Shown here piece by piece: positions 21,859-63,999 of a stretch of DNA of 64,000 nt. Under the pieces are notes generated by a model. It saw only the letters and a program-made list of their open reading frames with translations. It was not told where the DNA came from and searched no databases. Where the stretch lies: the IMG/VR virus record IMGVR_UViG_3300046092_000062, positions 124,001 through 188,000 of that record; one strand, written 5' to 3'. The position numbers were made by a program, and so were the translations under genes. Position 1 is the first letter of the stretch. Every line of letters starts with the position of its first letter.

Positions 21859-22235
21859 CAACTAACTTTATTACCCCGCCGGATTTTGTAGAAGATCCAA
21901 ATCATTCAGTATTGTTAATTGACGTTGATCCAGTTGACGTTGAAACATTGGCATTTTTATGTGCAGGGCATAACGAAGCATTTAACGTGTACCTTTACAG
22001 TGCAGAATTAGATGACGTTAATTGGCTTACTAAGGCAGCAGGGCAAGTAGATGCAATCGTAGTAAACACCGCAGCCACTGATCTAAGTCCAATCAAAGAC
22101 CTATTTGTTGGGTCAGAAAAAACATATCATTACGGGCCAAAGAACTTTATCAATAATGATCGTAAATACACTAACGTATTAGAATATTTTATCAAAAGAG
22201 CCCATGAGCGAAACCATTCAACCGATCCACTGTAA
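21855..22235 (+). CDS. hypothetical protein
   Basis: ATGA overlap; FITPPD. Confidence 0.65.
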   Translation: MTTNFITPPDFVEDPNHSVLLIDVDPVDVETLAFLCAGHNEAFNVYLYSAELDDVNWLTKAAGQVDAIVVNTAATDLSPIKDLFVGSEKTYHYGPKNFINNDRKYTNVLEYFIKRAHERNHSTDPL

Positions 22236-23406
22236 CTTCTGTGGTAAAAGCCGCAACGAAGTTGAAAAGTTAATTGTAGCCAATGACGCGGGCATTTGTA
22301 ATGAATGTATCACGCTTTGTAGCAACATCATTAACAAAGAAGCCAACGATCATATTCGCAAGGATAAGAAAATTGGCAAGGCACTTGATCCAATTAAAAT
22401 CAAACAGCACTTAGACGAATACATTATCGGCCAAGACGCTGCAAAGATTGCAATTAGTGTGGGAGTGGTTAATCACTACAAACGCATCTTCTTTGAAAGC
22501 TCAGTGGAACTAGAAAAGTCGAACATTCTAATTCACGGCCCAACCGGCTCAGGTAAAACACTGCTGGCCAAAACAATCGCACGTTATCTAAACGTGCCCT
22601 TTGTTGTAGCAGATGCCACTACACTAACCGAAGCAGGATACGTAGGGGATGATGTTGAAAGTATTATCTCAGGCTTGCTAGCAGCAGCAGAATACGATGT
22701 TGCTCGTTGTGAGCAAGGTATTATCTTCCTAGATGAAGTGGACAAGATTGCACGTAAAAGTGAATCAGCTAGTCTAACCCGCGACGTAAGCGGTGAAGGT
22801 GTACAGCAAGCTCTACTCAAGCTAGTAGAAGGTACCAAGTGCAAGGTCAGCGTAAATGGTGGTAAGAAGCATCCAGCAATGGATCAAGTGGAAATTGATA
22901 CTAGCAAGATCTTGTTTATTGCTGGAGGCGCATTTGCTGGACTACCTAAGATTGTTGACCGTAGACAGCGTGGAACCAGTATTGGATTCAACTCGGCTAA
23001 CGAAGATCAAATCGACGTTACAGAAGTGACCCCAGACGATTTCCAAAAGTTCGGAATGATCCCTGAGTTCACAGGACGTTTCCCAATCTCTGTACAAATT
23101 GACGAACTAAGCAAGGATGACTTTGTTAAGATTCTAACTGAACCCAAGAACAACTTGCTTGCACAGATGAAGTTTTACTTCTCCTCAGACGAAGTGGAAT
23201 TAATGTTTACACTGGAAGCCATTGAAGCAGTGGCTGACTTGGCAGTGCAGCAAAAGGTTGGAGCTCGTGGACTAAAGAGTATTTTAGAGCGTACTCTTAC
23301 ACCATATATGTACACCCTAACTGAAATTAAAAAGCAGGGTTTTAAAAAGATAGAGATTACTGACAAAGTGGTTAAATATAACGACCCACCTAATTTTATA
23401 GAATAG
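22204..23406 (+). CDS. clpX: ATP-dependent Clp protease ATPase ClpX
   Basis: C4 Zn finger, [12 protein letters not shown] pore loop, DEVDK, IGF loop, GARGL. Confidence 0.97.
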
Positions 23407-25085: not shown

Positions 25086-25284
25086 ACAAGAAAACACATT
25101 CCGAGTACTAAAGGGCGACGATCCATTGGTAACCAGTCGTTGGTGCAGCTTTGGGTTCCATAAATGGACTAAATGGGATAATACCAATGAGGTGCGCACG
25201 TATAGAGGCAACTACATTGTGCAGGTTAAGAAGTGTGCTCATTGCGGGGACTTCAAACAGAGAAAGAAAAATTTAATAGCATGA
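25078..25284 (+). CDS. small Cys/His protein (DUF1660-like)
   Basis: CSFGFHKW...CAHCG. Confidence 0.55.
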   Translation: MNEQENTFRVLKGDDPLVTSRWCSFGFHKWTKWDNTNEVRTYRGNYIVQVKKCAHCGDFKQRKKNLIA

Positions 25285-25748
25285 TTTTCAATAAGATCAA
25301 ACAGCTTAAAGATGAAGGTAAAGTCATTGGCATTACCTTCAGTCAATTTGACTTGCTACATGCAGGACACATTGCCATGCTAGCAGAAGCTAAGAACCAC
25401 TGTGATTACTTGATTGCGGGCCTGCAAACTGATGCCACAATCGATCGCCCTGATACCAAAAACAAGCCTATCCAAAGTGTAGTGGAACGACAAATCCAAC
25501 TGAGTGCATGTCGCTTTGTTGATGAAATTGTCGTGTACCAAACTGAACAAGACCTACGTGACTTGATTCTTATCTTGCCCATTGATGTGCGCATCTTGGG
25601 CGTAGAATACGAAAGCCAAGACTTTACAGGTCGTGCAGAAGGTTCGCACATTGGTATCCAGCATATCTTCAACAGCAGAGATCACAGTTTCTCTAGCAGC
25701 AGTTTGCGCAAACGTGTAGCAGACGCCGAAACTAAAAAGACAAAATAA
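25281..25748 (+). CDS. cytidylyltransferase-like protein (TagD family)
   Basis: FDLLHAGH (HxGH), FSSSSLR. Confidence 0.88.
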   Translation: MIFNKIKQLKDEGKVIGITFSQFDLLHAGHIAMLAEAKNHCDYLIAGLQTDATIDRPDTKNKPIQSVVERQIQLSACRFVDEIVVYQTEQDLRDLILILPIDVRILGVEYESQDFTGRAEGSHIGIQHIFNSRDHSFSSSSLRKRVADAETKKTK

Positions 25749-30553: not shown

Positions 30554-31309
30554 ATGCGTAGCACTATACTTATTTTGGCATTACTTGCCAGCAGCATTAG
30601 TTGGGCGAAACCTGCCACAACTATCGACGACACTAGCGACCTTACTGCAAAGTCCTGGCTCATTGCAGACGAACAAAACCAAATCCTAGCCAGTAAAGAC
30701 ACTGGTACCATACGCCCAATGGCCAGCATTACCAAGGTAATGACTGTGCTAACAGTGATGGAAGCAAAACAGGATCTAAATCAATCTATAGCCTACAATC
30801 GAACTCTACGCCTAACTAGGCAAGAGCTTATCAATCTTGCAATAGTCAAAAGCGACAACCATGCAGCAGACCTGCTATGCAGACATTACGTGGGCGGGTA
30901 CGGCAATTGCATCAGCGATATGAATGCTAACGCTATGAAGTACGGTATGCGACATACTAACTATGTTGATGCTACTGGATTGCTAGCAGACAATACCAGC
31001 ACCGCAGAAGATTTGTTACTGTTATTGAACGTAGCAGAGAAGAATTATCTTATTGTGGACTCGGCCACCAAGACCAAAGTGGAAATTAAGAACAAGAAGA
31101 AATGGTTGATCTTTAAACAAACCAATCCCTTAATAGGTCACAAGCACAAGTTCATTGTTAGTAAGACTGGTACCACTAACGCAGCAGGTGGTTGTATCAT
31201 TTTAACAGTTGAAACAGAACGCGGCCTGCGCCGCGTTGTTGTGTTGGGTAGTAAGAACGGTAGAACCCGTATACCTGAAGCTGAGTTTATCTACAAGCAA
31301 GTAGACTAG
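30554..31309 (+). CDS. peptidase S11 D-Ala-D-Ala carboxy/endopeptidase (PBP7-like)
   Basis: Signal peptide; SITK, SDN and KTG motifs. Confidence 0.92.
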   Translation: MRSTILILALLASSISWAKPATTIDDTSDLTAKSWLIADEQNQILASKDTGTIRPMASITKVMTVLTVMEAKQDLNQSIAYNRTLRLTRQELINLAIVKSDNHAADLLCRHYVGGYGNCISDMNANAMKYGMRHTNYVDATGLLADNTSTAEDLLLLLNVAEKNYLIVDSATKTKVEIKNKKKWLIFKQTNPLIGHKHKFIVSKTGTTNAAGGCIILTVETERGLRRVVVLGSKNGRTRIPEAEFIYKQVD

Positions 31310-40097: not shown

Positions 40098-40119
40098 ATA
40101 CTTGATAATAAGAACAACT

Positions 40120-40881
40120 ATGACCGATTTTTCTAGATATTCAGATGCACTGCTTTCAGCACTTAAACACTCAAGCAAAGAGCAAGAGATTGTAACAAAG
40201 AAGCAAGAAATTTTAGATGGCATCTATGGATTTCACAACTTTGTGCCAAATACAACTTTATTCGTTGGGTTCAATCCCGCATTGCTTTCTGCCAAGAACG
40301 GCGACGTTTCTGTCACCTGTATTAGCCAAGCCGCAAGGGATTACTTAGACAGCAAGAACGTCAAGTACACATACGTATCAGAATCTGAAACTGTTGGTAA
40401 GAAGTTTGACGTTGTGGTTGCAATGGAAGAATTCTTTACGTTTGCTGATAACGAGTTAGATCAGCAAAATGTTGTTAAACAGATTTGTAACCTAGCCAGT
40501 GAATTTGTGGTAAGTACTTTACGTGATTATAAGAATCAAGACTTTAAAGATCGTGAGTTCAGTATCCCAGCTGTGATTCGAAATGGCAAGACCAACTGCG
40601 TTTACAATGAGTTCCATGACTGGGACTTTGCAAACCGTAGCGCATGGACCACTACTGTATACGAAATTTCAAATCCAGCACACGAACTAACCACTTACGG
40701 ACCGTTTAATAGACGTACTATGTACTTCAAACAGTTGGCTAAGTTTAGTATGGATGCAGGTGCAGGTGATTTCATTGTGCATAAAAACCTCATGTATAAG
40801 TCATTGATTAAGAAAAATTATGAACACGTTATCAGCATAAGATTTGAAGATCAATGGAACTATCAAAATTCGACTCGTTAG
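40120..40881 (+). CDS. degenerate methyltransferase-fold protein
   Basis: TLFVG...FDVVVA pattern; late promoter at 40093. Confidence 0.45.
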   Translation: MTDFSRYSDALLSALKHSSKEQEIVTKKQEILDGIYGFHNFVPNTTLFVGFNPALLSAKNGDVSVTCISQAARDYLDSKNVKYTYVSESETVGKKFDVVVAMEEFFTFADNELDQQNVVKQICNLASEFVVSTLRDYKNQDFKDREFSIPAVIRNGKTNCVYNEFHDWDFANRSAWTTTVYEISNPAHELTTYGPFNRRTMYFKQLAKFSMDAGAGDFIVHKNLMYKSLIKKNYEHVISIRFEDQWNYQNSTR

Positions 40882-42097: not shown

Positions 42098-43105
42098 ATG
42101 ACTACACCACGAATTGGGTTTGCCTGTAAGTTTAGTGAACTTACCCCTAAAGGCATTGAAAGTGTTCCGGAATTAAATACACGCGGCACTACTGTGGCGT
42201 GGCTAAATAGACAGAGCAAGCATATTGCAGAGGAACGTCTCTGGGATATCATGAAGCACAACATCGAATCGGCAAAACTGCTGGTAGAAAAAGTAGGAAC
42301 CCTTGAACAACATCTCAGAATGGTGCGCCTTAGCAGCGACCTTCTTCCTGTATATACCGAGCCTTCTTGGAGTTATTTTTGGCGTCAGCCTGACGTTAGG
42401 GCTTATTGCGAAAAACACTTTGCGCAGGTTGGCGCTGTTGCTCGTTGCAGCAATGTGCGTCTTAGTTTTCACCCAGGTCAATTCTGCGTTCTCGCAAGCG
42501 ATTCTGGAGATGTTGTTGAACGCTCAATCCTTGAGTTCGAATACCATGCTGATATGACCCGTTGGATGGGCTATGGACAAAAATTTCAAGACTTCAAAAT
42601 CAACGTACACATATCGGGACGCAAGGGTCCGCAGGGCATTAGAGATGTATATGGCCGTCTATCGCCTGAAGCACGTAACTGTCTAACACTAGAGAACGAG
42701 GAATACACACATGGTTTGGACGATTGTTTGTCTTTACACGATCTTGTACCTACTGTGCTCGATATTCATCATCACTGGATCCGAGAAGGTGAGTACATTG
42801 ATGCGGGCAGCGATCGTGTTAAGGCAGTTGTTGATAGCTGGCGCGGCGTGCGCCCTACTTTACACTACAGTGTTTCACGAGAAGATGTCCTTGTCGGGCA
42901 CTGTGCGAACACCTTGCCCGATCACCCAGCGTTGCTTGTAAGCGGTTACAAAAAGCAAAAACTTCGTGCTCACAGTGACTACTACTGGAACAATGCAGTT
43001 AACGAGTGGGCTGCTACGTTTACTAAAGACTTTGATGTCATGTGCGAGAGCAAGGCCAAGAACCTTGCTAGCATTAAGTTCGCGACAGTAGCTCTTCAAT
43101 CTTAG
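42098..43105 (+). CDS. uvsE: UV damage endonuclease
   Basis: RIGFAC, RLSSD, HPGQF, LENEE, DIHHH, RAHSD, ESKAK; promoter 42064-42092. Confidence 0.93.
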   Translation: MTTPRIGFACKFSELTPKGIESVPELNTRGTTVAWLNRQSKHIAEERLWDIMKHNIESAKLLVEKVGTLEQHLRMVRLSSDLLPVYTEPSWSYFWRQPDVRAYCEKHFAQVGAVARCSNVRLSFHPGQFCVLASDSGDVVERSILEFEYHADMTRWMGYGQKFQDFKINVHISGRKGPQGIRDVYGRLSPEARNCLTLENEEYTHGLDDCLSLHDLVPTVLDIHHHWIREGEYIDAGSDRVKAVVDSWRGVRPTLHYSVSREDVLVGHCANTLPDHPALLVSGYKKQKLRAHSDYYWNNAVNEWAATFTKDFDVMCESKAKNLASIKFATVALQS

Positions 43106-56489: not shown

Positions 56490-56876
56490 TTGATGATCAA
56501 GTACATTAAAGAAACCACCACGCCAGCGGATGTAATTAGACCTGTGTTCCGCCCAGAACTCAAGCATGTGTTTGATGCAAGGGATGCAATTATTACAAAA
56601 TATAATGTTGCAGGTACCGAAACAACCCACGAAAAAACAGATTTACCAGACGGGTCAAAAATCACTGTAATGGTCAAGTTCTTTGAGTCTGTAGAGAAGT
56701 TTGATCAATGCTTTGCAGAGTTGCGAGATGCAAATCAAACTATCACTGCAACAGTCAACAATGAAAATGTCACAGTTGACTCAATCAACCACAATTTTGG
56801 AATCACAATTCGATATCAATTGCGTGATGCAGAGACTGACGAAATTGTACGAGATTGGACAGTTGCAGGTCGTTAA
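56490..56876 (+). CDS. late hypothetical protein
   Basis: CTAAATA and AGGAG upstream. Confidence 0.65.
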   Translation: MMIKYIKETTTPADVIRPVFRPELKHVFDARDAIITKYNVAGTETTHEKTDLPDGSKITVMVKFFESVEKFDQCFAELRDANQTITATVNNENVTVDSINHNFGITIRYQLRDAETDEIVRDWTVAGR

Positions 56877-56902
56877 ATTATAGCCTTGTGCTATAATGTA
56901 AG

Positions 56903-57226
56903 TTATTGCTGTATGAAGCAAAGAGAAAAGTGTTCTGGACGCGGGTTCGACTCCCGCCAGGTCCACCATTAAGCATACTACCCGACTGTAAAATTCAGTA
57001 AGCATTTAGGGAAGATCCACAGTAGTATGTTTAATAATGGGCCTGCCATGGTTTCGACAGGGCAACAAGTAAACAAGTGGACAGCTCGGCAATGTGAAAG
57101 CCGTTAGGGTTGGGGATTCCCGGCCGTAGAAGCAAAAAACGTAAATGCAAACGACGAACAGTTTCTAATGGTAGCCTGATAAAGGCTTCCGGGGCAGCTA
57201 TGCCTTGCAACAGGAAATAGTAATAG
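56903..57226 (+). ncRNA. ssrA: circularly permuted (two-piece) tmRNA
   Basis: T-arm and 3' acceptor strand GCGGGTTCGACTCCCGC-CAGGTCC-A-CCA (ends 56968) precede the 5' end GGGCCTG..TTCGAC (57039); G3-U70 Ala pair; tag ORF 57147-57179 ANDEQFLMVA. Confidence 0.9.
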
Positions 57227-57246
57227 GGGCTTCGGCCCCTATTTTC
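57222..57246 (+). terminator. intrinsic terminator
   Basis: AATAGGGGC-TTCG-GCCCCTATTTT. Confidence 0.85.
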
Positions 57247-57265
57247 TAATTACATACTCTATTCA

Positions 57266-58234
57266 ATGAAAAAATTCTTTTGTCCTGCACCGTGGCGATC
57301 TTTGTTCTACCATGTTGATCAATCGGCTGTGTGCTGCATTAGTTCTAAGAAGTTTAGCATGAGTCCAATAGAGTTTAGAAATAGCGACTACCTTAAAGAT
57401 TTAAAAACTAAATTTTTAAATAACGAGTTCGACGAAACTTGCAGTGGATGCAAGTCTCTAGAAGACGCAGGGCTGCAAAGTATAAGACAGCACCTACTCG
57501 CACTATACAGTGAGACCACAGTTGACCAACTCGATTATATGGAGCTGCGAGCAAGCAATCTTTGTAATTTTCAGTGCAAGATGTGCAATAGTGAAAACAG
57601 CTCTCTTATCAGTGGCTCAGTTAATACCGTCTTAGATTCTGACTGGGACGAAATACTTACTATGTCAGAGAATCTAAAGTTCCTTACATTAACTGGCGGC
57701 GAGCCAATGATAATTAAGCACTACTACCAGTTACTGGATCACTTGATAGCTAAAGACAAAACAGACATTAACTTGCGAGTCTACACCAATGCAAGTGTGT
57801 ATAATCACATATTCGTTGAGAAGCTGCTGAAATTTAATACAACATTAAACCTCAGTGTTGACGGAGTAGGAAGAACAGCAGAACTACAACGCACAGGCAC
57901 AGTCTGGTCTACAGTACAAGATAACATTACCAAGTTTGTGGCTTTACCGATTCAGATAAAATTTCATACCACTCTCACAAACATCTCGATCGTTGACATA
58001 CACTCGTTGGCCAAGTACTTTGTCGAGATAGTTGAAAATAATCCCCACTGCACCTTTGTTGCACATACTGCCAACAGTCCCAAATACCTATCCATTTACA
58101 ATCTAGCGCCTGCATTGTTTAACACCGCATTACGTAGCATCGAATCTGCACTAGGCATTCTAGTGCATCCACAATTTGCACAACTCAGAGAGCAGTTGGT
58201 TGCACATCAATCACTAATCAAAAGCAAACAATAA
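57266..58234 (+). CDS. radical SAM protein with N-terminal Cys (twitch/SPASM-like) domain
   Basis: CNFQCKMC, GGEP, TNAS, SVDG; FCPAPW, CC, C..C. Confidence 0.88.
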   Translation: MKKFFCPAPWRSLFYHVDQSAVCCISSKKFSMSPIEFRNSDYLKDLKTKFLNNEFDETCSGCKSLEDAGLQSIRQHLLALYSETTVDQLDYMELRASNLCNFQCKMCNSENSSLISGSVNTVLDSDWDEILTMSENLKFLTLTGGEPMIIKHYYQLLDHLIAKDKTDINLRVYTNASVYNHIFVEKLLKFNTTLNLSVDGVGRTAELQRTGTVWSTVQDNITKFVALPIQIKFHTTLTNISIVDIHSLAKYFVEIVENNPHCTFVAHTANSPKYLSIYNLAPALFNTALRSIESALGILVHPQFAQLREQLVAHQSLIKSKQ

Positions 58235-58370
58235 CTTGAATATGCCGTCGGCCTTAGGCCTATTGTCGACATAGGAAAAGTTAATGGAAAATCGTAGATT
58301 TATAGAGTAAATAAATGTACAATAGATACACGAACATACAGTTCTTAACATTTTAACAAAGGAAATCAAA

Positions 58371-58910
58371 ATGAAAACAATCGGTGATAAACTAACCCCA
58401 TTCGCAGTAACAGGTGTTAAGCCAGGGCAACCAGCTGACCCATACTTCACAATTACAGACCAAAGCTTCGAAGGCAAGTGGAAAGTAATCGTGTTCTATC
58501 CAAAAGACTTTACATTCGTATGTCCAACAGAAATCGTAGCATACGATAAGTTGACAGGTGACTTTGCTGACCGTGATGCAATCTTGCTAACAGGTTCGAC
58601 AGACAACGAGTTCTGTAAGACAGCATGGCAAATGGCACACGCTGACTTGAAGAAAATCACTCACACTCAGTTTGCTGATACACAACGTGGTGAGTTGAGC
58701 TTGGTTGAGCAGTTGGGTGTATTCTACGCTCCAGCAGGTGCTGCACTTCGTGCAACATTCATCGTTGACCCAGAAAACGTTATCCAACACGTTACCGTCA
58801 ACAACTTGGACGTGGGCCGTAGCCCAGAAGAAACCCTGCGTATTCTTGACGCATTGCAAACTGGCGAACTTTGCGCTTGCAACCGTACCATCGGTGGCGA
58901 AACACTTTAA
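58371..58910 (+). CDS. ahpC: peroxiredoxin AhpC
   Basis: FYPKDFTFVCPTE, RATFIVDP, GR..EE.LR. Confidence 0.95.
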   Translation: MKTIGDKLTPFAVTGVKPGQPADPYFTITDQSFEGKWKVIVFYPKDFTFVCPTEIVAYDKLTGDFADRDAILLTGSTDNEFCKTAWQMAHADLKKITHTQFADTQRGELSLVEQLGVFYAPAGAALRATFIVDPENVIQHVTVNNLDVGRSPEETLRILDALQTGELCACNRTIGGETL

Positions 58911-58924
58911 TTAAGGAGACTGGC

Positions 58925-59431
58925 ATGGCTTTTATCGATACAGTAAAAGGTGCGTTACCCGAGTACGCAAAAGACACCAAACTTAATTTGGAAGCAGTCC
59001 TTGTCCGTAGTACACTAGATGCTGATGTTGCAATGGGCTGTGCAGTAGCCGCACTTGCTGCAACTGGCAATGGTAAAGTACTGAGCATCTTGTTAGCAGA
59101 CAGTCCAGTACACGCAGAGTCAGCAATGACGGCTGCATCAATTATGGCACAAAACAACACGTGGTATCCATTTGTTGAAATGGCAGACGATCCTAATCTA
59201 AAGGGATTGCCAGCTCAGTTGCGTATGAACGCCATTGCAAGTCACGGTGGTACTACCAAAGCTAATTTTGAAGCGTTTAGTCTTGCAGCCAGCATTGTTG
59301 GTAAATGTCACTTCTGTGTTAAGGCGCATTACGAGACATTGAAGGCAGAAGGCTACACAGTAGAGAACTTACGAGACATTGGGCGTATTGCAAGTGTCAT
59401 GAATGCTGTAGCCAAAGTGCTAAACAGTTAA
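58925..59431 (+). CDS. ahpD: alkyl hydroperoxide reductase AhpD
   Basis: PEYAKD.KLN, MAQNN.WY, CHFCVKAH. Confidence 0.93.
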   Translation: MAFIDTVKGALPEYAKDTKLNLEAVLVRSTLDADVAMGCAVAALAATGNGKVLSILLADSPVHAESAMTAASIMAQNNTWYPFVEMADDPNLKGLPAQLRMNAIASHGGTTKANFEAFSLAASIVGKCHFCVKAHYETLKAEGYTVENLRDIGRIASVMNAVAKVLNS

Positions 59432-59437
59432 TCGGAT

Positions 59438-59461
59438 ACCCGCTTCGGCGGGTTTTCTTTT
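59438..59461 (+). terminator. intrinsic terminator
   Basis: ACCCGC-TTCG-GCGGGT TTTCTTTT. Confidence 0.85.
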
Positions 59462-59529
59462 GGTTGCATTTTAATGACTCTGGTGTTATACTAAAACTGT
59501 AGAAAGTAGTTAACCCAAAGGAGCAGAAA

Positions 59530-59721
59530 ATGGCAGAAGTTAAACTAAATGGTCCCTTGTACAAAGTCACAATGACTGAATATGAGCGTGGTTATGGCCA
59601 GCGCCCAATGGGAGAAAAGTTGTTTGATAACGAGCAAGAAGCCAAGGATTTTGTTGCAGCATACAACAAAGATCCCGGCGATCCCGACTGCTACTACCGC
59701 GCAGACTACAGAAAGGTTTGA
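59530..59721 (+). CDS. small phage protein (EYERGYGQR)
   Basis: AGGAG RBS. Confidence 0.7.
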   Translation: MAEVKLNGPLYKVTMTEYERGYGQRPMGEKLFDNEQEAKDFVAAYNKDPGDPDCYYRADYRKV

Positions 59722-59752
59722 CAAATAATGGTTTTGGTTGTATAATACATAT

Positions 59753-59923
59753 ATGAACAAAACAAAACGCTTTTATTTCGGTAACGAATGGTTTCTTCCA
59801 CCCTTCCGCGTACACGGATATTGGGTGGAAGATGCTACCGGAAAGAACGTAGCAGAAGCAGCAAGCCCTGCACTTGCCAAAGCATTAGCAGAATTGCTAA
59901 CTAAAATGTCTGTAACTGCTTGA
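59753..59923 (+). CDS. small hypothetical protein
   Basis: Promoter 59718-59746, leaderless ATG. Confidence 0.6.
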   Translation: MNKTKRFYFGNEWFLPPFRVHGYWVEDATGKNVAEAASPALAKALAELLTKMSVTA

Positions 59924-59965
59924 CAATAAAAGAATCAGGTGTTATAATAAACACATAAATAAAAA

Positions 59966-59988
59966 TACAGAGAGATAGACTTTCTGTA
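59966..59988 (+). promoter_or_regulatory. 5' UTR hairpin with G-ATAGA-C loop
   Basis: TACAGAGAG-ATAGA-CTTTCTGTA after promoter 59920-59948. Confidence 0.6.
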
Positions 59989-60014
59989 CTCAACATTATA
60001 CAAAGGATTTTTGT

Positions 60015-60482
60015 ATGTCAGTAGATTTCACATCACCCGAGATGATTGCAGCAGTATGCGAGGCACTGCCCTTAGCAAACCGCCCAGCAGTTGAAGCAAT
60101 CGTAAAAGCATTAACTGAAAAGCTCAATGTAGCAACCCCCAAACAACGAACTGTCTACGCAGTGTGGACCAACACAGACTTGACTGAAGGTCGTGGTCGT
60201 GAGTATGTTCAATACCTTTGCGAGAAACGTGCAACAGCACTTCGCAAAGCCAAGAAGAACTATGTTATGGGCACCGATAGCCGCGTAACAGAAGAAAAAC
60301 TGTTTAACGCAGGCAGTGGCTGGTATGGTCCAGTTAACGTGCTTGACCCAAGTCAAGAAGACTTACGAGTTGAGCAACAACTTGAAGCTGAACAGAAAGC
60401 AAAGTCTGCCAAAGAAGCAGCTATTGCTAAAGCAAAAGAATTGGGCTTAACCGAAGCCGACATCAAAGCATTGCGAGGTTAA
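60015..60482 (+). CDS. phage protein (NTDLTEGRG motif)
   Basis: AAGGA RBS; C-terminal coiled coil. Confidence 0.7.
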   Translation: MSVDFTSPEMIAAVCEALPLANRPAVEAIVKALTEKLNVATPKQRTVYAVWTNTDLTEGRGREYVQYLCEKRATALRKAKKNYVMGTDSRVTEEKLFNAGSGWYGPVNVLDPSQEDLRVEQQLEAEQKAKSAKEAAIAKAKELGLTEADIKALRG

Positions 60483-60483
60483 T

Positions 60484-61500
60484 ATGAAAAAATACAATAC
60501 ACTGGTCTTGATTGGTCGCTTTCAACCCTTCCACAATGCTCACTTGGAAATTATCAAACGCAGCACTGCACTCTGCGACAAGCTGATTGTGATTACAGGT
60601 AGCGCAGCTCAACCCCGTACTTACAAGAACCCCTTCACTAGTGCCGAACGAGCACAAATGATTAAAGCCGCAACTGGCGGACTTGCATTGCAAATTGTCA
60701 TTGAAGAAAACATTGACACCATGTACAACGACCAAGCCTGGGCAGTTCGTGTTCAAGGTATTGTGCAACGCAATACAAAAGCTGGTGAGAAAATTGCTAT
60801 CATTGGACACAAGAAAGACGACAGCAGCTTTTATCTCGATATGTTCCCACAGTGGGGCTACGAGAACGTAGAAGAAATTGCACCACTCAGTGCAGTTAAC
60901 ATTCGCGATTTGTACTTCAAGCGTGATTGCAACATGGAATTCATCCGTGGTGTAGTGCCCCGTACTACTTTTGATTTCTTGACACAATTCAAAGAAACAC
61001 CAGAGTACGAACAAATCATTCGTGAACGTGAGTTCTTGATTGAACACGCCAAGCAATATGCTGGTCTCAAATATCCTCCAATCTTTAGCACAGCTGATGC
61101 CGCAGTGATTTGTTCGGGCCATGTGCTTATGATCAAACGCCGTGCTGAACCTGGACGTGGCTTGTGGGCACTGCCCGGCGGTTACGTTAACGCCAGCACT
61201 GACAAGACTGTACTGGATGCAGCTATTCGCGAACTCCGCGAAGAAACTGGTATCAAAGTACCCGAGCCAGTGTTGCGTGGCAGCATTACAGGCAACCGAG
61301 TGTTTGATGCAGTGGATCGCAGTCCACGTGGTCGTATCATCACCCACGCCTTTAAAATTGAATTGCCTGATGGTGCATTGCCTAAAGTAAAAGGCAGCGA
61401 CGATGCTGAAAAAGCACGTTGGGTTCCTATTGCAGAAGTGCGCAGCGATGAGTGTTTCGAAGATCACTACGATATGGTCCAGTGGGCTGTGGGTGTTTAA
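60484..61500 (+). CDS. nadM: bifunctional NMN adenylyltransferase / ADP-ribose pyrophosphatase (NadM-Nudix)
   Basis: GRFQPFHNAH, KNPF, SA..IR; Nudix box PGG...RELREETG, SDDA. Confidence 0.95.
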   Translation: MKKYNTLVLIGRFQPFHNAHLEIIKRSTALCDKLIVITGSAAQPRTYKNPFTSAERAQMIKAATGGLALQIVIEENIDTMYNDQAWAVRVQGIVQRNTKAGEKIAIIGHKKDDSSFYLDMFPQWGYENVEEIAPLSAVNIRDLYFKRDCNMEFIRGVVPRTTFDFLTQFKETPEYEQIIREREFLIEHAKQYAGLKYPPIFSTADAAVICSGHVLMIKRRAEPGRGLWALPGGYVNASTDKTVLDAAIRELREETGIKVPEPVLRGSITGNRVFDAVDRSPRGRIITHAFKIELPDGALPKVKGSDDAEKARWVPIAEVRSDECFEDHYDMVQWAVGV

Positions 61501-61501
61501 T

Positions 61502-61711
61502 ATGCACAAAAGCAATTACCAACCCAAGCGTAGTCAACAACTTTTCCTAGCTGAACAAGTTAGGACTCAAGTGTTTAACGACACAATGGATCAGATTGTT
61601 GTGCATCATGTGTTGGAAGATACTCCAACCCGATTGTATCTACAAATTGAACGCCGTGCAACAAGCCCGATGGGCTTTGATAAGATTTACTTTGAAAGAG
61701 TGGAGTTGTAA
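61502..61711 (+). CDS. hypothetical protein
   Basis: Packed ORF. Confidence 0.55.
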   Translation: MHKSNYQPKRSQQLFLAEQVRTQVFNDTMDQIVVHHVLEDTPTRLYLQIERRATSPMGFDKIYFERVEL

Positions 61712-61972
61712 ATGGTTACACTACCTGTAGATTTTGTGGCAACACGCTTTCCGGGTTACTTCTGGAACGTGGCAGAAGAGAAACTGTATTCTGTCAAAGT
61801 TACAGGCGAACTTCGCCCAATGGCATTCCATAAAGGTGGATTCTTTTACGGAACCAAGGTTGAACCCGGATATCAAATCAGCGTTAATGGCAGGAAGCGT
61901 ACATACCCAATGTCGTACTTGACTTCGCTCAAAGCAACCACAGCTATCCAAGAAATTGGTGTAGCGAAATAA
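61712..61972 (+). CDS. hypothetical protein
   Basis: PGYFWN...LYS.K. Confidence 0.65.
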   Translation: MVTLPVDFVATRFPGYFWNVAEEKLYSVKVTGELRPMAFHKGGFFYGTKVEPGYQISVNGRKRTYPMSYLTSLKATTAIQEIGVAK

Positions 61973-62012
61973 TAGTTGACACAGAAATAGGTCTGCGTTA
62001 TACTGTAAGCAA

Positions 62013-62034
62013 GTCCCAGAGATAGACTCAGGGC
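62013..62034 (+). promoter_or_regulatory. 5' UTR hairpin with G-ATAGA-C loop
   Basis: GTCCCAGAG-ATAGA-CTCAGGGC after promoter 61976-62004. Confidence 0.6.
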
Positions 62035-62058
62035 AACTTTAAATAAAGGAACTTTATT

Positions 62059-63462
62059 ATGAAACTCTCTAAAAACATCATTCTCAACACCGACAGCTAC
62101 AAAGTGTCAATGGGCCGCCAATACCCAGCTGGCACTACCAATGTATTCAGCTACATTGCAGCACGTGGTGGTAAATTCACATTCACGCAGTTTGTTGGAC
62201 TGCAAATGTTCATCAAGGAGTATTTGCTTGAACAAATCACCAAAGAAGACATCGACATTGCAGAAGAAATCCTCACAGCGCACGGCGAGCCATTTGACCG
62301 CAGCATGTGGGACTACATTGTCGAAGCACACAACGGCTACTTGCCAGTGGTCATTAAAGCCGTACCAGAAGGCACTGTTGTGCCAGTTGGCAACGCATTA
62401 GTCACAATCGAAAACACTGACCCCAAGTGCCACGGTTTAACTACTTGGTTGGAAACTCCATTGCTTCGCGCAGTGTGGTACCCAACTACAGTCTCAACAC
62501 AAAGCAAGTACATTAAAAACATCTTGCAAGAATACTTGGAGAAATCAGGTGATCCTGCTTCTATCGGTTTTAAACTGCACGATTTTGGTGCTCGTGGTGT
62601 ATCTTCAATGGAGAGTGCTGGTATTGGGGGTGCAGCCCACTTGGTCAACTTCATGGGCACGGACACTATTACTGGTGTTCTTTACGCTCGTGAATATTAC
62701 AATGCTGGTATTGCTGGATTTAGCATTCCTGCAGCCGAACACAGTACTATCACTAGTTGGGGTCGCGCAGGCGAACTGAACGCTTACAGCAACATGGTTA
62801 CACAGTTTGGCAAGCCAGGCGGCATTGTTGCAGTTGTGTCTGACAGCTATAACATCTACGAAGCATGTAAAATGTGGAGCACTGGTGCGCTGAAACAGCA
62901 AGTGATTGATTCAGGTGCCACAGTTGTTATCCGTCCTGACTCAGGTGATCCTGTTGACGTGATGCCAAAGATGATTGCAATTCTTGCAGAAGGTTTTGGT
63001 TACACTACAAACGACAAGGGCTACAAAGTTCTCAACAATGTGCGTATGATCTGGGGTGATGGTATTAACCCATTGTCAATCCAAAGCATCTTGCGCACAA
63101 TGGTTGACGTGGGTGGTTGGAGTGCAGACAACTTTGCGTTTGGTATGGGCGGTGCTTTGTTGCAAGCAATTGATCGTGATACACAAAAATGGGCTATGAA
63201 ATGCTCAAGTGCATGTATCGATGGTGAATGGGTTGATGTTTACAAAGACCCAATCACTGACAGCGGCAAAGCTTCACTCAAAGGTCGTGTCAAGTTGTGG
63301 ACCAACAGTGGTGGCGAGTTTGCGACAAGTGTGCAAGCCCCTACTGGTTGGAGCGACAAGGGCATCGGTGGTTGGGTTGATGCAATGAAAACTGTCTACA
63401 TGGATGGTGCATTGTTTAACGAAATCACCTTTGAAGAAGTTCGTGCTAACAGCATGAAATAA
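62059..63462 (+). CDS. nadV: nicotinamide phosphoribosyltransferase (NAMPT)
   Basis: TDSYK, LHDFGARG, PAAEHS, VSDSY, RPDSGDP, GDG, FGMGG.L. Confidence 0.96.
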   Translation: MKLSKNIILNTDSYKVSMGRQYPAGTTNVFSYIAARGGKFTFTQFVGLQMFIKEYLLEQITKEDIDIAEEILTAHGEPFDRSMWDYIVEAHNGYLPVVIKAVPEGTVVPVGNALVTIENTDPKCHGLTTWLETPLLRAVWYPTTVSTQSKYIKNILQEYLEKSGDPASIGFKLHDFGARGVSSMESAGIGGAAHLVNFMGTDTITGVLYAREYYNAGIAGFSIPAAEHSTITSWGRAGELNAYSNMVTQFGKPGGIVAVVSDSYNIYEACKMWSTGALKQQVIDSGATVVIRPDSGDPVDVMPKMIAILAEGFGYTTNDKGYKVLNNVRMIWGDGINPLSIQSILRTMVDVGGWSADNFAFGMGGALLQAIDRDTQKWAMKCSSACIDGEWVDVYKDPITDSGKASLKGRVKLWTNSGGEFATSVQAPTGWSDKGIGGWVDAMKTVYMDGALFNEITFEEVRANSMK

Positions 63463-63514
63463 TGAGTAACAAGGGCATTGACTAACATCGGTGCTCTTGT
63501 TATAATTACAAAAT

Positions 63515-63589
63515 GCGCTAGTAGCTAAATGGTATAGCAGGAGTTTCTAAACCTCTGAATCGCGGGTTCGATTCCCGCCTAGCGCACCA
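63515..63589 (+). tRNA. tRNA with CUA anticodon (amber suppressor)
   Basis: GCGCTAG/CTAGCGC acceptor, GCTA/TAGC D stem, GGAGT-TTCTAAA-CCTCT anticodon arm (CTA 63547-49), GCGGG-TTCGATT-CCCGC, encoded CCA; promoter 63478-63506. Confidence 0.8.
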
Positions 63590-63699
63590 TAGTTAAGTAC
63601 ATTAGCGGTTTGCCTGGGAACCAGTAGAGCGATCTATCCAGGACGGAACAAAGTGGGCAAGTTGGTTCTTGCTACTCCGGCAGTGTACTTAACTATGGT
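63586..63699 (+). ncRNA. unknown structured RNA closed by an 18-bp stem
   Basis: ACCATAGTTAAGTACATT pairs with AGTGTACTTAACTATGGT; two internal hairpins with complementary loops. Confidence 0.55.
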
Positions 63700-63714
63700 T
63701 AATAAGGAAATAAC

Positions 63715-63999
63715 ATGCAAGTAATGCACGACAGAGTTTTAATTAAGAAACTCGAACCCGAAACAAAATCCGCAGGTGGCATTATGCTAACGACTTCAGT
63801 AACTCCAGTTTACGAAGCTGAAGTTGTAGCAGTAGGCACAGGCAAGCCCGTTAAAGACGGCGCACCTATTCCACTTACGGTAAAAGTTGGTGACCGAGTG
63901 ATGTACAATCCTTCTGCTACTATTACTGTAACAGTCAAGGGCGAAACTTTGCTAGTAATCAAGGAAGAAGAAATCTTCGCTATTTTGGACAACGAGTAA
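63715..63999 (+). CDS. groES: co-chaperonin GroES
   Basis: HDRVLIK, KSAGGI.L, VVAVG.G, VKVGDRV, EEEIFAI. Confidence 0.93.
   Translation: MQVMHDRVLIKKLEPETKSAGGIMLTTSVTPVYEAEVVAVGTGKPVKDGAPIPLTVKVGDRVMYNPSATITVTVKGETLLVIKEEEIFAILDNE

What the first reader, a model, noticed from the sequence alone, without database searches (positions are those of the whole stretch)
63515..63589. Amber-suppressor tRNA in a phage that still uses TAG as a stop
Seen: the canonical cloverleaf register gives anticodon CUA (4 of 5 anticodon-stem pairs), whereas the alternative Arg-UCU register leaves the stem mostly unpaired. Long genes contain no in-frame TAG, and TAG ends only a few genes (e.g. clpX 23406, 15204, 31309, 40881, uvsE 43105). 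Inference: conditional read-through of selected phage or host stops, an early stage of TAG recoding, or sabotage of host termination. The charged amino acid is unclear.
Basis: partly seen in the sequence, partly recalled or inferred. Interest (0 to 1): 0.7.

Follow-up and report, generated by a model that had tools for sequence, protein, structure and literature searches.

The report
Amber-suppressor tRNA in a standard-code jumbo phage
A freshwater jumbo phage that keeps the normal genetic code carries a conserved tRNA built to read the UAG stop codon, a trait already recorded in several cultured relatives; what is new here is that phages with this tRNA have nearly purged UAG from their own gene ends, and that in one subgroup the tRNA is always followed by an almost invariant structured RNA.

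Summary
The tRNA at 63515-63589 (+) is real, with anticodon CUA in the canonical register (ARAGORN; Rfam 66.7 bits). It has its own near-consensus sigma-70 promoter and an encoded CCA end. A search with the anticodon left free found 11 viral contigs, all CUA; 13 of 20 stem pairs show compensatory changes, so selection maintains it. The 321-kb T4-gp23-type jumbo phage uses the standard code: 89% coding under code 11 and no in-frame TAG. No read-through target exists: extensions past TAG are short and non-homologous, and only 1 of 7 TAG stops is kept in a relative at about 51% amino-acid identity.

This is not new in kind. XacN1, RsoM2USA, Serratia BF and Phosso carry CUA tRNAs under the standard code, with unknown targets.

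New here:
- The TAG/TGA stop ratio is 0.08-0.14 in six genomes with the tRNA and 0.8-1.2 in two complete relatives without it, independent of GC.
- A near-invariant 110-nt hairpin follows the tRNA in seven loci.
- A permuted tmRNA often co-occurs.

The inserted amino acid is unresolved, and no phage synthetase or full release factor was found. I conclude it is a working, host-charged amber suppressor from which the phage insulates itself by avoiding TAG. Its beneficiary is not established.

The parts
63478..63506 (+). Sigma-70-type promoter of the tRNA: TTGACT, 17-nt spacer, TATAAT, with TG before the -10. The -10 ends 8 nt before tRNA position 1, so the 5' leader would be about 1-3 nt.
   Evidence: Consensus scan, 11 of 12 matches. 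Comparable promoters sit before the family members in other contigs.
63515..63589 (+). tRNA with anticodon CUA (63547-63549). Acceptor stem of 7 Watson-Crick pairs, A73, encoded CCA, 5-nt variable loop, loop UUCUAAA, anticodon stem with G27.U43 and a U31.C39 mismatch.
   Evidence: ARAGORN; Rfam 66.7 bits; family covariation, 13 of 20 pairs with compensatory change and 0 of 500 shuffles as high; CUA invariant when the anticodon was left free in the search.
63590..63699 (+). Structured RNA element directly 3' of the tRNA. An 18-bp closing stem also pairs the tRNA's A73-CCA (63586-63589) and encloses a three-way junction with a GNRA tetraloop. It is followed by the groES ribosome-binding site.
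   Evidence: MFE -48.5 kcal/mol, z -4.9. Near-identical in seven loci that carry four different tRNA-CUA bodies; tetraloop GCGA, GUAA or GCAA. No Rfam match at E<=10.
63715..63999 (+). groES (Cpn10), probably co-transcribed with the tRNA and hairpin.
   Evidence: Pfam Cpn10, E 7e-24. The tRNA-CUA to groES adjacency recurs in L128, L166, L168 and L169.
62059..63462 (+). nadV (nicotinamide phosphoribosyltransferase), the upstream neighbour. Used as a synteny anchor.
   Evidence: Pfam NAPRTase and NAMPT_N. Of 80 related loci, only the closest relatives have the tRNA after nadV.
56876..57270 (+). Permuted (two-piece) tmRNA, tag ANDEQFLMVA**, 6.2 kb upstream. In relatives it lies 0.6-1 kb from the tRNA-CUA.
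   Evidence: ARAGORN; Rfam beta_tmRNA 116 bits and tmRNA_permuted 112.6 bits; linkage in G003, G007 and XacN1.
22204..23406 (+). clpX, one of the few TAG-terminated genes. Its read-through extension would be 21 codons.
   Evidence: Pfam zf-C4_ClpX and AAA_2; TAG confirmed; the G003 orthologue ends in TGA.
42098..43105 (+). uvdE (UV endonuclease), TAG-terminated, with a 15-codon extension.
   Evidence: Pfam UvdE; TAG confirmed; orthologues end in TGA in G003 and TAA in G004.
30554..31309 (+). S11 D-Ala-D-Ala carboxypeptidase gene, TAG-terminated.
   Evidence: The orthologue ends in TAA in G001, TGA in G003 and TAA in G004.
40102..40881 (+). 259-aa ORF ending in the tandem stop TAGTAG.

Best explanation
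This is a working amber-suppressor tRNA. Shown: it is a canonical elongator tRNA with anticodon CUA and an efficient-suppressor-type loop (YUCUAAA), it has its own strong sigma-70 promoter and an encoded CCA, and selection keeps it intact with CUA unchanged across a diverged phage clade. Inferred: host RNA polymerase transcribes it from early in infection, a host aminoacyl-tRNA synthetase charges it (the phage encodes none of the six synthetase families tested), and it competes with host RF1 to insert an amino acid at UAG. The phage does not need it to express any of its own genes. The code is standard and no gene carries an in-frame TAG. Instead, the phage is insulated from its own suppressor: TAG closes only about 4% of its genes, roughly eight times fewer relative to TGA than in related phages without such a tRNA, and the few remaining TAG stops are followed by short, harmless extensions. 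The benefit therefore most likely comes from read-through on messages that are not the phage's own (host or competing elements), or from keeping ribosomes moving at UAG when RF1 is limiting. It would then be part of a translation-termination and rescue toolkit that often includes a phage tmRNA. That last step is inference only.
For: tRNA call and register. Promoter. The family search with the anticodon free returned 11 contigs, all CUA, and further bodies with CUA are in L166-L169. Covariation: 93.8% of cells paired, 13 of 20 pairs with compensatory change, 0 of 500 shuffles as high, slid controls at 29-45% paired. Standard code: density 0.89 under code 11 against 0.86 with TAG as sense, and the same ordering in three relatives. 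No targets; the XacN1 authors reached the same result. TAG avoidance tracks the tRNA: TAG/TGA is 0.12 (G000), 0.12 (G001), 0.08 (G003), 0.14 (Serratia BF), 0.14 (RsoM2USA) and 0.09 (XacN1), against 0.79 (PA5oct) and 1.17 (Vibrio 2.275.O). The TAG trinucleotide itself is not depleted, O/E 0.88-1.2. No full RF1 or RF2 and no synthetase of six Pfam families. tmRNA linkage.
Against: There is no direct evidence of expression, charging or decoding. RNA-library contigs cover only the T-arm, hairpin and groES start of relatives, and DNA carry-over cannot be excluded. The amino acid is unknown. G004 has equally rare TAG stops (2.6%, TAG/TGA 0.10) with no tRNA-CUA detected, although that contig is only 83% complete. 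The TAG/TGA contrast rests on about four independent lineages with the tRNA against two without, uses a home-made gene caller, and cannot show which came first, the depletion or the tRNA. The anticodon stem is weak in most family members (27.43 and 31.39 mismatched), and the effect on decoding is unknown. No host is identified, so a host-directed role is untested.
Confidence: 0.6

Rival explanations
1. The phage is an evolutionary intermediate on the way to TAG-to-sense recoding, following the published path of stop-codon depletion, then acquisition of a suppressor tRNA, then in-frame TAG in late genes.
For: Rare TAG stops plus a tRNA-CUA are the first two steps of the model in the Borges et al. 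preprint. TAG is at 2.5-5.6% of stops in all genomes that carry the tRNA.
Against: No in-frame TAG was found in any of four genomes spanning about 50% amino-acid divergence, and TAG-as-sense lowers coding density. The same state occurs in several cultured lineages, which points to a stable condition. GC is 41-50% in most of them, so low GC does not drive the depletion as that model proposes. No RF2 gene is present.
Confidence: 0.15
2. The tRNA drives programmed read-through of particular phage genes, adding functional C-terminal extensions.
For: TAG is retained at 13-14 of 16 orthologous stops between G000 and its 91%-identical relative G001.
Against: Only 1 of 7 TAG stops is retained in G003, and clpX and uvdE end in TGA there. 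Extension lengths match those after TAA and TGA, with medians of 10, 10 and 9 codons. No extension has homology in distant relatives apart from antisense shadows and one neighbouring NUDIX gene in another frame. The XacN1 authors found nothing either.
Confidence: 0.05
3. The tRNA is a tolerated passenger with no selected function, harmless because TAG stops are rare.
For: No target was found, and function is unknown in every cultured relative.
Against: CUA and the loop are invariant while the stems change by compensation. Each copy has its own strong promoter. CUA tRNAs with different bodies occur in several lineages.
Confidence: 0.08
4. It is not a decoder. It would be a tRNA-shaped processing signal or 5' leader for the groES message, cut by RNase P or 3' nucleases, together with the hairpin.
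For: The order promoter, tRNA, hairpin, groES is conserved. The hairpin pairs with the tRNA's ACCA end. One RNA-library contig spans the T-arm, hairpin and groES start.
Against: A processing signal has no need for an invariant CUA anticodon and YUCUAAA loop. The family also occurs without groES or the hairpin, next to the tmRNA or other genes.
Confidence: 0.05
5. It reads something other than UAG, for example UAA after a lysidine-type modification of C34, AGA in a shifted UCU register, or a quadruplet codon through an effectively 9-nt loop.
For: Pairs 27.43 and 31.39 are mismatched in 7-8 of 12 family members, leaving only three firm anticodon-stem pairs.
Against: TAG, not TAA, is the stop that is depleted; TAA closes 60% of genes and would be disastrous to suppress. 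CUA is central in either a 7-nt or a 9-nt loop. Position 20 is U, not the A20 that ArgRS uses (read from the sequence; the identity rule is from my own knowledge of E. coli). Both programs choose the CUA register.
Confidence: 0.05

Closest known systems
Suppressor tRNA(CUA) genes of Xanthomonas jumbo phage XacN1 (Yoshikawa et al. 2018, PMC5852040)
   Same: A standard-code jumbo myovirus with dozens of tRNAs and CUA tRNAs. Only about 3% of genes end in TAG, in-silico read-through found no targets, and a permuted tmRNA lies about 1 kb away. The anticodon arm has the same GAG/CUC core, CUCUAAA loop and 27.43 and 31.39 mismatches.
   Different: The acceptor and D stems are unrelated. XacN1 has two tandem copies inside 66-kb terminal repeats among the other tRNAs. 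It lacks the 3' hairpin and has no groES next to the tRNA.
tRNA-Sup(CUA) of Ralstonia phage RsoM2USA, Serratia phage BF / Erwinia pEa_SNUABM_19 and Sinorhizobium phage Phosso
   Same: Jumbo phages, three of them among the closest gp23-type capsid relatives (63-69% amino-acid identity). Each has one CUA tRNA with a CUCUAAA loop. TAG stops are rare in the two analysed, RsoM2USA at 5.6% and BF at 2.5%. The BF copy is already annotated tRNA-Sup in GenBank.
   Different: The tRNA bodies differ and the anticodon stems are fully paired. BF has no tmRNA. In RsoM2USA and Phosso the tmRNA lies far from the tRNA.
Suppressor tRNAs of TAG-recoded (code 15) crAss-like, Lak and other gut phages (Borges et al. 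preprint 10.1101/2021.08.26.457843)
   Same: A phage-encoded tRNA-CUA, presumably charged by host enzymes, in a host that uses the standard code.
   Different: Those phages carry in-frame TAG in late and lysis genes, gain coding density under code 15, and sometimes encode RF2. None of these holds here.
Theta (HDV-like) ribozymes placed directly 3' of phage tRNAs, one in five of them suppressor tRNAs (Kienbeck et al. 2024, PMC10879173)
   Same: A conserved structured RNA begins immediately after a phage suppressor tRNA, where it could set or control the tRNA's 3' end.
   Different: No Rfam match, HDV-like families included. The predicted fold is a 110-nt three-way junction closed by an 18-bp stem that pairs with the CCA end, not a small double pseudoknot. 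Self-cleavage is untested. The setting is freshwater jumbo phages, not gut phages.
Classical bacterial amber suppressors (supE, supF, supP types)
   Same: An elongator tRNA with CUA and a YUCUAAA loop, including the A36-A37-A38 context typical of efficient suppressors (read from the sequence; the rule is from my own knowledge).
   Different: Those are single-base mutants of identifiable parent tRNAs. This family has no clear parent; the nearest tRNA in the genome is Leu(UAA), 58 of 75 positions with the long arm missing.

Membership tests
Canonical elongator tRNA (Rfam RF00005) | Score above the family's gathering threshold over the full model | tested here: met
   66.7 bits against a 29-bit threshold, model positions 1-71 of 71.
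Canonical elongator tRNA (Rfam RF00005) | Cloverleaf supported by covariation among homologues | tested here: met
   13 of 20 pairs show compensatory change. Acceptor, D and T helices are 100% paired. No shuffle of 500 reached the observed values.
Amber-suppressor tRNA | Anticodon CUA at positions 34-36 of a 7-nt loop, with U33 and a purine at 37 | tested here: met
   Loop UUCUAAA. CUA is invariant in all family members found with the anticodon left free.
Amber-suppressor tRNA | Is aminoacylated and inserts an amino acid at UAG in vivo | not testable with these tools
   Only indirect support is available: TAG/TGA stop ratios of 0.08-0.14 in genomes with the tRNA against 0.8-1.2 without it.
   The variable loop is 5 nt, GG is present in the D-loop, the T-loop is standard TTCGA, and the anticodon stem has at most 5 pairs. 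No tRNA-synt_2d-type synthetase is present in the genome.
Stop-codon-recoded phage (code 15, TAG = Gln) | Higher coding density or unfragmented genes when TAG is read as sense | tested here: not met
   Density is 0.890 under code 11 and 0.861 with TAG as sense. The ordering is the same in G001, G003 and G004.
Stop-codon-recoded phage (code 15, TAG = Gln) | In-frame TAG aligned to sense codons in conserved genes | tested here: not met
   No read-through extension has true homology. TAG-ended genes stop where their orthologues stop.
Stop-codon-recoded phage (code 15, TAG = Gln) | Accessory code-change genes (RF2, a dedicated synthetase) | tested here: not met
   The only release-factor homologue is a 129-aa GGQ fragment matching the C-terminal half of RF1. 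Six synthetase families are absent.
   Both programs place CUA at 34-36. The covarying pairs 28-42, 29-41 and 30-40 fix that register. Position 20 is U. The genome has its own regular tRNA-Arg(UCU) at genome 54070-54144.
Theta / HDV-like ribozyme 3' of a tRNA | Match to HDV-like ribozyme models or the double-pseudoknot fold | tested here: not met
   No ribozyme family matched at E<=10 in 63440-63760. The predicted fold is a three-way junction. Cleavage activity cannot be tested here.

The most novel reading that the evidence does not exclude
The promoter, tRNA-CUA and near-invariant 3' RNA element would form a controlled suppressor module. The element holds the tRNA's CCA end in an 18-bp helix until it is cut, by itself or by a nuclease, which would time the onset of UAG read-through in the infected cell. 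Together with the phage tmRNA, this would let a phage purged of TAG corrupt termination of host or rival-phage proteins while staying immune. That would be a termination-targeted weapon rather than a code change.
Probability: 0.15. Interest if true: 0.7.

Novelty: new member of a known kind. Interest (0 to 1): 0.42.

Why it matters
Why phages that keep the standard code carry suppressor tRNAs has been an open question since XacN1 was described in 2018. This locus gives three testable handles. First, a diverged tRNA family with an invariant CUA shows that selection acts on the anticodon. Second, TAG stops are roughly eight times rarer relative to TGA in phages that carry the tRNA. This is the footprint expected if the suppressor is active in vivo, and GC content does not explain it. 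Third, a conserved RNA sits at the tRNA's 3' end and may control its maturation. Cultured relatives with the same trait (XacN1, Serratia BF, RsoM2USA) allow knock-out and ribosome-profiling experiments. If the suppressor acts on host or competitor messages, that would be a new kind of phage takeover of translation. If not, it documents a long-lived pre-recoding state.

Tried and rejected
- **Phage collection searches:** a DNA search with the 4-kb region found only distant nadV matches. The 75-nt tRNA alone hit only generic tRNA similarities.
- **Wasted scans:** one viral-contig scan failed because I miscounted the spacer, 27 N instead of 25. A 7-mer pattern search over four records was uninformative, though it did yield genome handles.
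- **nadV synteny:** 80 related loci showed the tRNA after nadV only in the closest relatives. The tRNA-Leu(UAA) at that position in L100 is not a convincing homologue.
- **Read-through candidates, all rejected:** G000_110 and G000_183 are antisense shadows of overlapping conserved genes. G000_21 is followed by a separate NUDIX gene in another frame.
- **RF1-fragment gene as a partner of the tRNA, rejected:** it is absent from XacN1, RsoM2USA, Phosso and BF, and present in Vibrio 2.275.O, which lacks the tRNA.
- **Amino-acid identity by nearest neighbour, inconclusive:** the top hit, 'Glu(CUC)' in G003, is a dubious 99-nt call, and Leu(UAA) recurs at only about 75% identity.
- **Expression from public RNA runs, inconclusive:** the contigs come from 90-97% relatives and may include DNA.
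- **Other:** a tblastn with the 937-aa window ORF found nothing. Rfam at a permissive threshold gave nothing for the hairpin. The literature search found no experimental study of suppressor tRNA function in standard-code phages.

Full report
**Observation.** ARAGORN finds two RNA genes in the window. One is a permuted tmRNA at 56876-57270. The other is a tRNA at 63515-63589 (+) with anticodon cta. Rfam's tRNA model matches 63515-63586 at 66.7 bits (threshold 29) over its whole length, with one non-standard pair in the anticodon stem, U31.C39. Read directly from the sequence, the tRNA has:
- seven Watson-Crick acceptor pairs, discriminator A73 and an encoded CCA;
- a 4-bp D stem with GG in the loop and a standard T arm;
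- a 5-nt variable loop;
- the anticodon loop UUCUAAA, which places CUA at positions 34-36 after U33 and before A37.

ARAGORN's label 'Pyl' is only its default name for CUA, and the architecture is not Pyl-like.

**Genome and code.** The window is bases 124001-188000 of a single 320,767-bp IMG/VR viral contig, which CheckV rates 92% complete and which has 43.8% GC. Public runs place it in freshwater metagenomes. Its major capsid protein is T4 gp23-like. The nearest cultured relatives, at 63-69% amino-acid identity, are jumbo myoviruses: Vibrio 2.275.O, Sinorhizobium Phosso, Pseudomonas PA5oct, Serratia BF and the Erwinia pEa_SNUABM phages. The genome has 48 other tRNAs, all clustered at genome 54-76 kb. 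The CUA tRNA sits alone about 110 kb away.

I used a simple ORF and codon-usage gene caller of my own. It genes covering 89% of the genome under code 11, with stops TAA 275, TGA 161 and TAG 19. Treating TAG as sense lowers the coding density (0.861 against 0.890). The same ordering holds in three relatives. The phage is therefore not recoded. As a check on the caller, it gives 14 TAG stops in 496 genes (2.8%) for XacN1, close to the published 18 in 592.

**The tRNA is a conserved family with an invariant anticodon.** A strict pattern found an identical tRNA, promoter and downstream hairpin in two relatives of 354 kb and 240 kb. A looser pattern that left the whole anticodon arm free returned 11 viral contigs, and every one carries CUA. 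Those 11 contigs and the window together give nine distinct sequences. Further, more diverged bodies with CUA turned up through the hairpin (L166-L169).

On an alignment of 12 sequences, including the two XacN1 copies:
- 93.8% of cells pair;
- 13 of 20 pairs show compensatory double changes;
- none of 500 shuffles reaches the observed values;
- sliding the partners drops pairing to 29-45%.

The acceptor, D and T helices are fully paired. In the anticodon stem only pairs 28-42, 29-41 and 30-40 are reliably paired, and they covary. Pairs 27.43 and 31.39 are mismatched in 7 and 8 of the 12 members. This weak stem is a trait shared with XacN1's copies. The covarying core also fixes the register, so the UCU reading is rejected. 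Each family member sits behind its own sigma-70-type promoter. In the window this is TTGACT, a 17-nt spacer and TATAAT, ending 8 nt before the tRNA.

**No phage gene needs it.** Extensions past TAG stops are as short as those past TAA or TGA, with medians of 10, 10 and 9 codons. None runs into the next gene. Against the 91%-identical relative G001, 13-14 of 16 alignable TAG stops are kept. Against G003, at about 51% mean amino-acid identity, only 1 of 7 is kept, and clpX and uvdE end in TGA there.

I translated every TAG-ended gene of four genomes through its TAG and searched the other genomes in six frames. The only distant matches beyond the TAG were two antisense shadows of overlapping conserved genes and one neighbouring NUDIX gene in another frame. 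In that last case all three orthologues end at the same residue.

**TAG stops are specifically avoided, and this tracks the tRNA.** The TAG trinucleotide is not depleted overall (observed/expected 0.88-1.2). Yet TAG stops are far rarer than TGA stops: 19 against 161, where strand trinucleotide counts predict a ratio of about 0.74 (binomial p about 7e-21). The same caller gives these TAG/TGA stop ratios:

| Genome | tRNA-CUA | TAG/TGA |
|---|---|---|
| G000 | yes | 0.12 |
| G001 | yes | 0.12 |
| G003 | yes | 0.08 |
| Serratia BF | yes | 0.14 |
| RsoM2USA | yes | 0.14 |
| XacN1 | yes | 0.09 |
| PA5oct | no | 0.79 |
| Vibrio 2.275.O | no | 1.17 |

GC content does not explain the pattern, because the two GC-poorest genomes include the TAG-rich PA5oct, while XacN1 at 50% GC has the fewest TAG stops.

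Four caveats apply:
- There are only about four independent lineages with the tRNA against two without.
- The direction of cause is unknown.
- G004 has rare TAG stops (ratio 0.10) with no CUA tRNA detected, but that contig is only 83% complete.
- The gene caller is home-made.

**Associated elements.**
- **Hairpin.** Directly after the CCA lies a 110-nt element, 63590-63699. Its 18-bp closing stem also pairs the tRNA's A73-CCA and encloses a three-way junction with a GNRA tetraloop (-48.5 kcal/mol, z -4.9). It occurs in seven loci, always immediately 3' of a tRNA-CUA, although those tRNAs have four clearly different bodies. The element itself is nearly invariant. The tetraloop is GCGA, GUAA or GCAA, two one-sided changes in the closing stem keep pairing, and one terminal pair is lost in L168. 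There are no double compensatory changes, so the fold is not proven by covariation. groES follows in six of the seven loci. Rfam has no match, HDV-like families included. I treat this as an unexplained, possibly new RNA motif that may control the tRNA's 3' end or the groES message.
- **tmRNA.** A permuted tmRNA lies 0.6-1 kb from the tRNA-CUA in G003, G007 and XacN1, and 5-6 kb away in G000 and G001. It is also present elsewhere in RsoM2USA and Phosso. It is absent from PA5oct and Vibrio 2.275.O, which have neither element. Serratia BF has the tRNA without a tmRNA, and G004 has a tmRNA without the tRNA. No SmpB gene is present in G000.
- **Release-factor fragment.** The only release-factor homologue is a 129-aa protein matching the C-terminal half of RF1 (GGQ domain, no codon-reading domain). 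It lies inside the tRNA cluster. It does not track the tRNA among cultured relatives.

**Charging.** Six synthetase families are absent from the genome: Glu/Gln, Asp/Asn/Lys, Trp/Tyr, Ile/Leu/Val, Phe/Pyl-type, and Ser/Thr/Pro/His/Gly. A host enzyme must therefore charge the tRNA. Nearest-neighbour comparison with 180 tRNAs from four related genomes is inconclusive. Leu(UAA) recurs, but only at about 75% identity and without its long arm. From my own knowledge of E. coli identity rules, a class-I tRNA with U35, A36 and A73 is most often charged with Lys or Gln. The acceptor and discriminator would also suit Tyr or Leu. None of this is tested here.

**Expression.** Metatranscriptome contigs from relatives at 90-97% identity cover nadV and groES. 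In a few runs they cover the tRNA T-arm, the hairpin and the groES start. One seawater contig carries the hairpin behind yet another CUA anticodon arm. These are assembled contigs and DNA carry-over cannot be excluded, so transcription is only weakly supported. Mature tRNA was not observed.

**Comparison with what is known.** The phenomenon is already on record:
- XacN1 has CUA tRNAs, 18 amber stops and no read-through targets.
- RsoM2USA has one CUA tRNA.
- Atu_ph07 has a UCA suppressor.
- Serratia BF's copy is annotated tRNA-Sup in GenBank.
- I also found copies in Phosso and Erwinia pEa_SNUABM_19.

Recoded gut phages use such tRNAs for a real code change, and a published model sees stop-codon depletion followed by suppressor acquisition as steps towards recoding. 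Theta ribozymes sit 3' of many phage suppressor tRNAs. This locus is therefore a new member of a known kind. Three additions appear to be new:
- the family-level proof that selection acts on the anticodon;
- the link between TAG avoidance and the tRNA, independent of GC;
- the conserved 3' element.

**Mechanism and verdict.** The best-supported reading is a functional, host-charged amber suppressor, transcribed from its own promoter, in a standard-code phage that has insulated itself by purging TAG stops. Its benefit most likely comes from read-through on non-phage messages or from termination and rescue management alongside the tmRNA. That last step is inference. The rivals, in order of weight, are:
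- a stable 'pre-recoding' state;
- a neutral passenger;
- programmed read-through of phage genes (largely refuted here);
- a non-decoding processing signal;
- decoding of another codon.

The decisive experiments are an amber-reporter assay with mass spectrometry, knock-outs and ribosome profiling in cultured relatives, and in-vitro processing of the tRNA-hairpin transcript.

Noticed in passing
window 63590-63699 (also L002, L003, L166, L167, L168, L169): A 110-nt three-way-junction RNA element lies directly 3' of the tRNA. It is almost invariant across seven loci whose tRNA-CUA bodies and flanks have diverged. Its tetraloop is always GNRA (GCGA, GUAA or GCAA), its closing stem pairs with the tRNA's ACCA end, and it has no Rfam match. 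It may be a new RNA motif.
   Followed up: partly
window 56876-57270: A phage-encoded permuted (two-piece) tmRNA with tag ANDEQFLMVA**, best matched by the betaproteobacterial model. No SmpB gene is in the genome. Relatives carry variants with different tags, and the tmRNA is often close to the tRNA-CUA. ARAGORN also finds a tmRNA in XacN1, whose paper does not mention one (0 occurrences of the word).
   Followed up: partly
genome 63360-63749 (L004 1492-1881), outside the window: A 129-aa protein equal to the C-terminal half of RF1, with the GGQ domain but no codon-recognition domain, encoded inside the tRNA cluster. It is conserved in G001 and G003, absent from G004, and does not track tRNA-CUA in cultured relatives. 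It could be a codon-independent peptidyl-tRNA hydrolase or rescue factor.
   Followed up: partly
genome 56715-56954, outside the window: Three consecutive 77-nt tRNAs with leucine anticodons (CAA, UAG, UAA) lack the long variable arm expected of bacterial tRNA-Leu. They sit alongside normal 84-nt Leu tRNAs elsewhere in the cluster and are conserved in G001.
   Followed up: no
window 57266-63462: A run of auxiliary genes lies between the tmRNA and the tRNA: a radical SAM protein, an AhpC peroxiredoxin, a CMD/AhpD-like protein, a bifunctional NMN adenylyltransferase-Nudix protein and NAMPT (an NAD salvage pair). Elsewhere in the window are both ribonucleotide reductase subunits, ClpX, UvdE and an S11 D-Ala-D-Ala carboxypeptidase.
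   Followed up: partly
genome about 25254-25651, minus strand, outside the window: A NUDIX-like gene that my gene caller missed lies just downstream of the TAG-GCG-TAG end of a 458-aa gene. It briefly mimicked a read-through extension.
   Followed up: yes
RsoM2USA 331545-331953; G004 95167-95617: The tmRNAs of these relatives have atypical predicted tags, DRRVEQSTLFHAPG* and a 28-residue tag ending ERFELAA*. These could be ARAGORN mis-calls or real divergence.
   Followed up: no
window 63590-63592: The first triplet after the tRNA's CCA end is TAG, and it pairs with CTA in the 3' strand of the hairpin's closing stem. This is probably coincidence.
   Followed up: no
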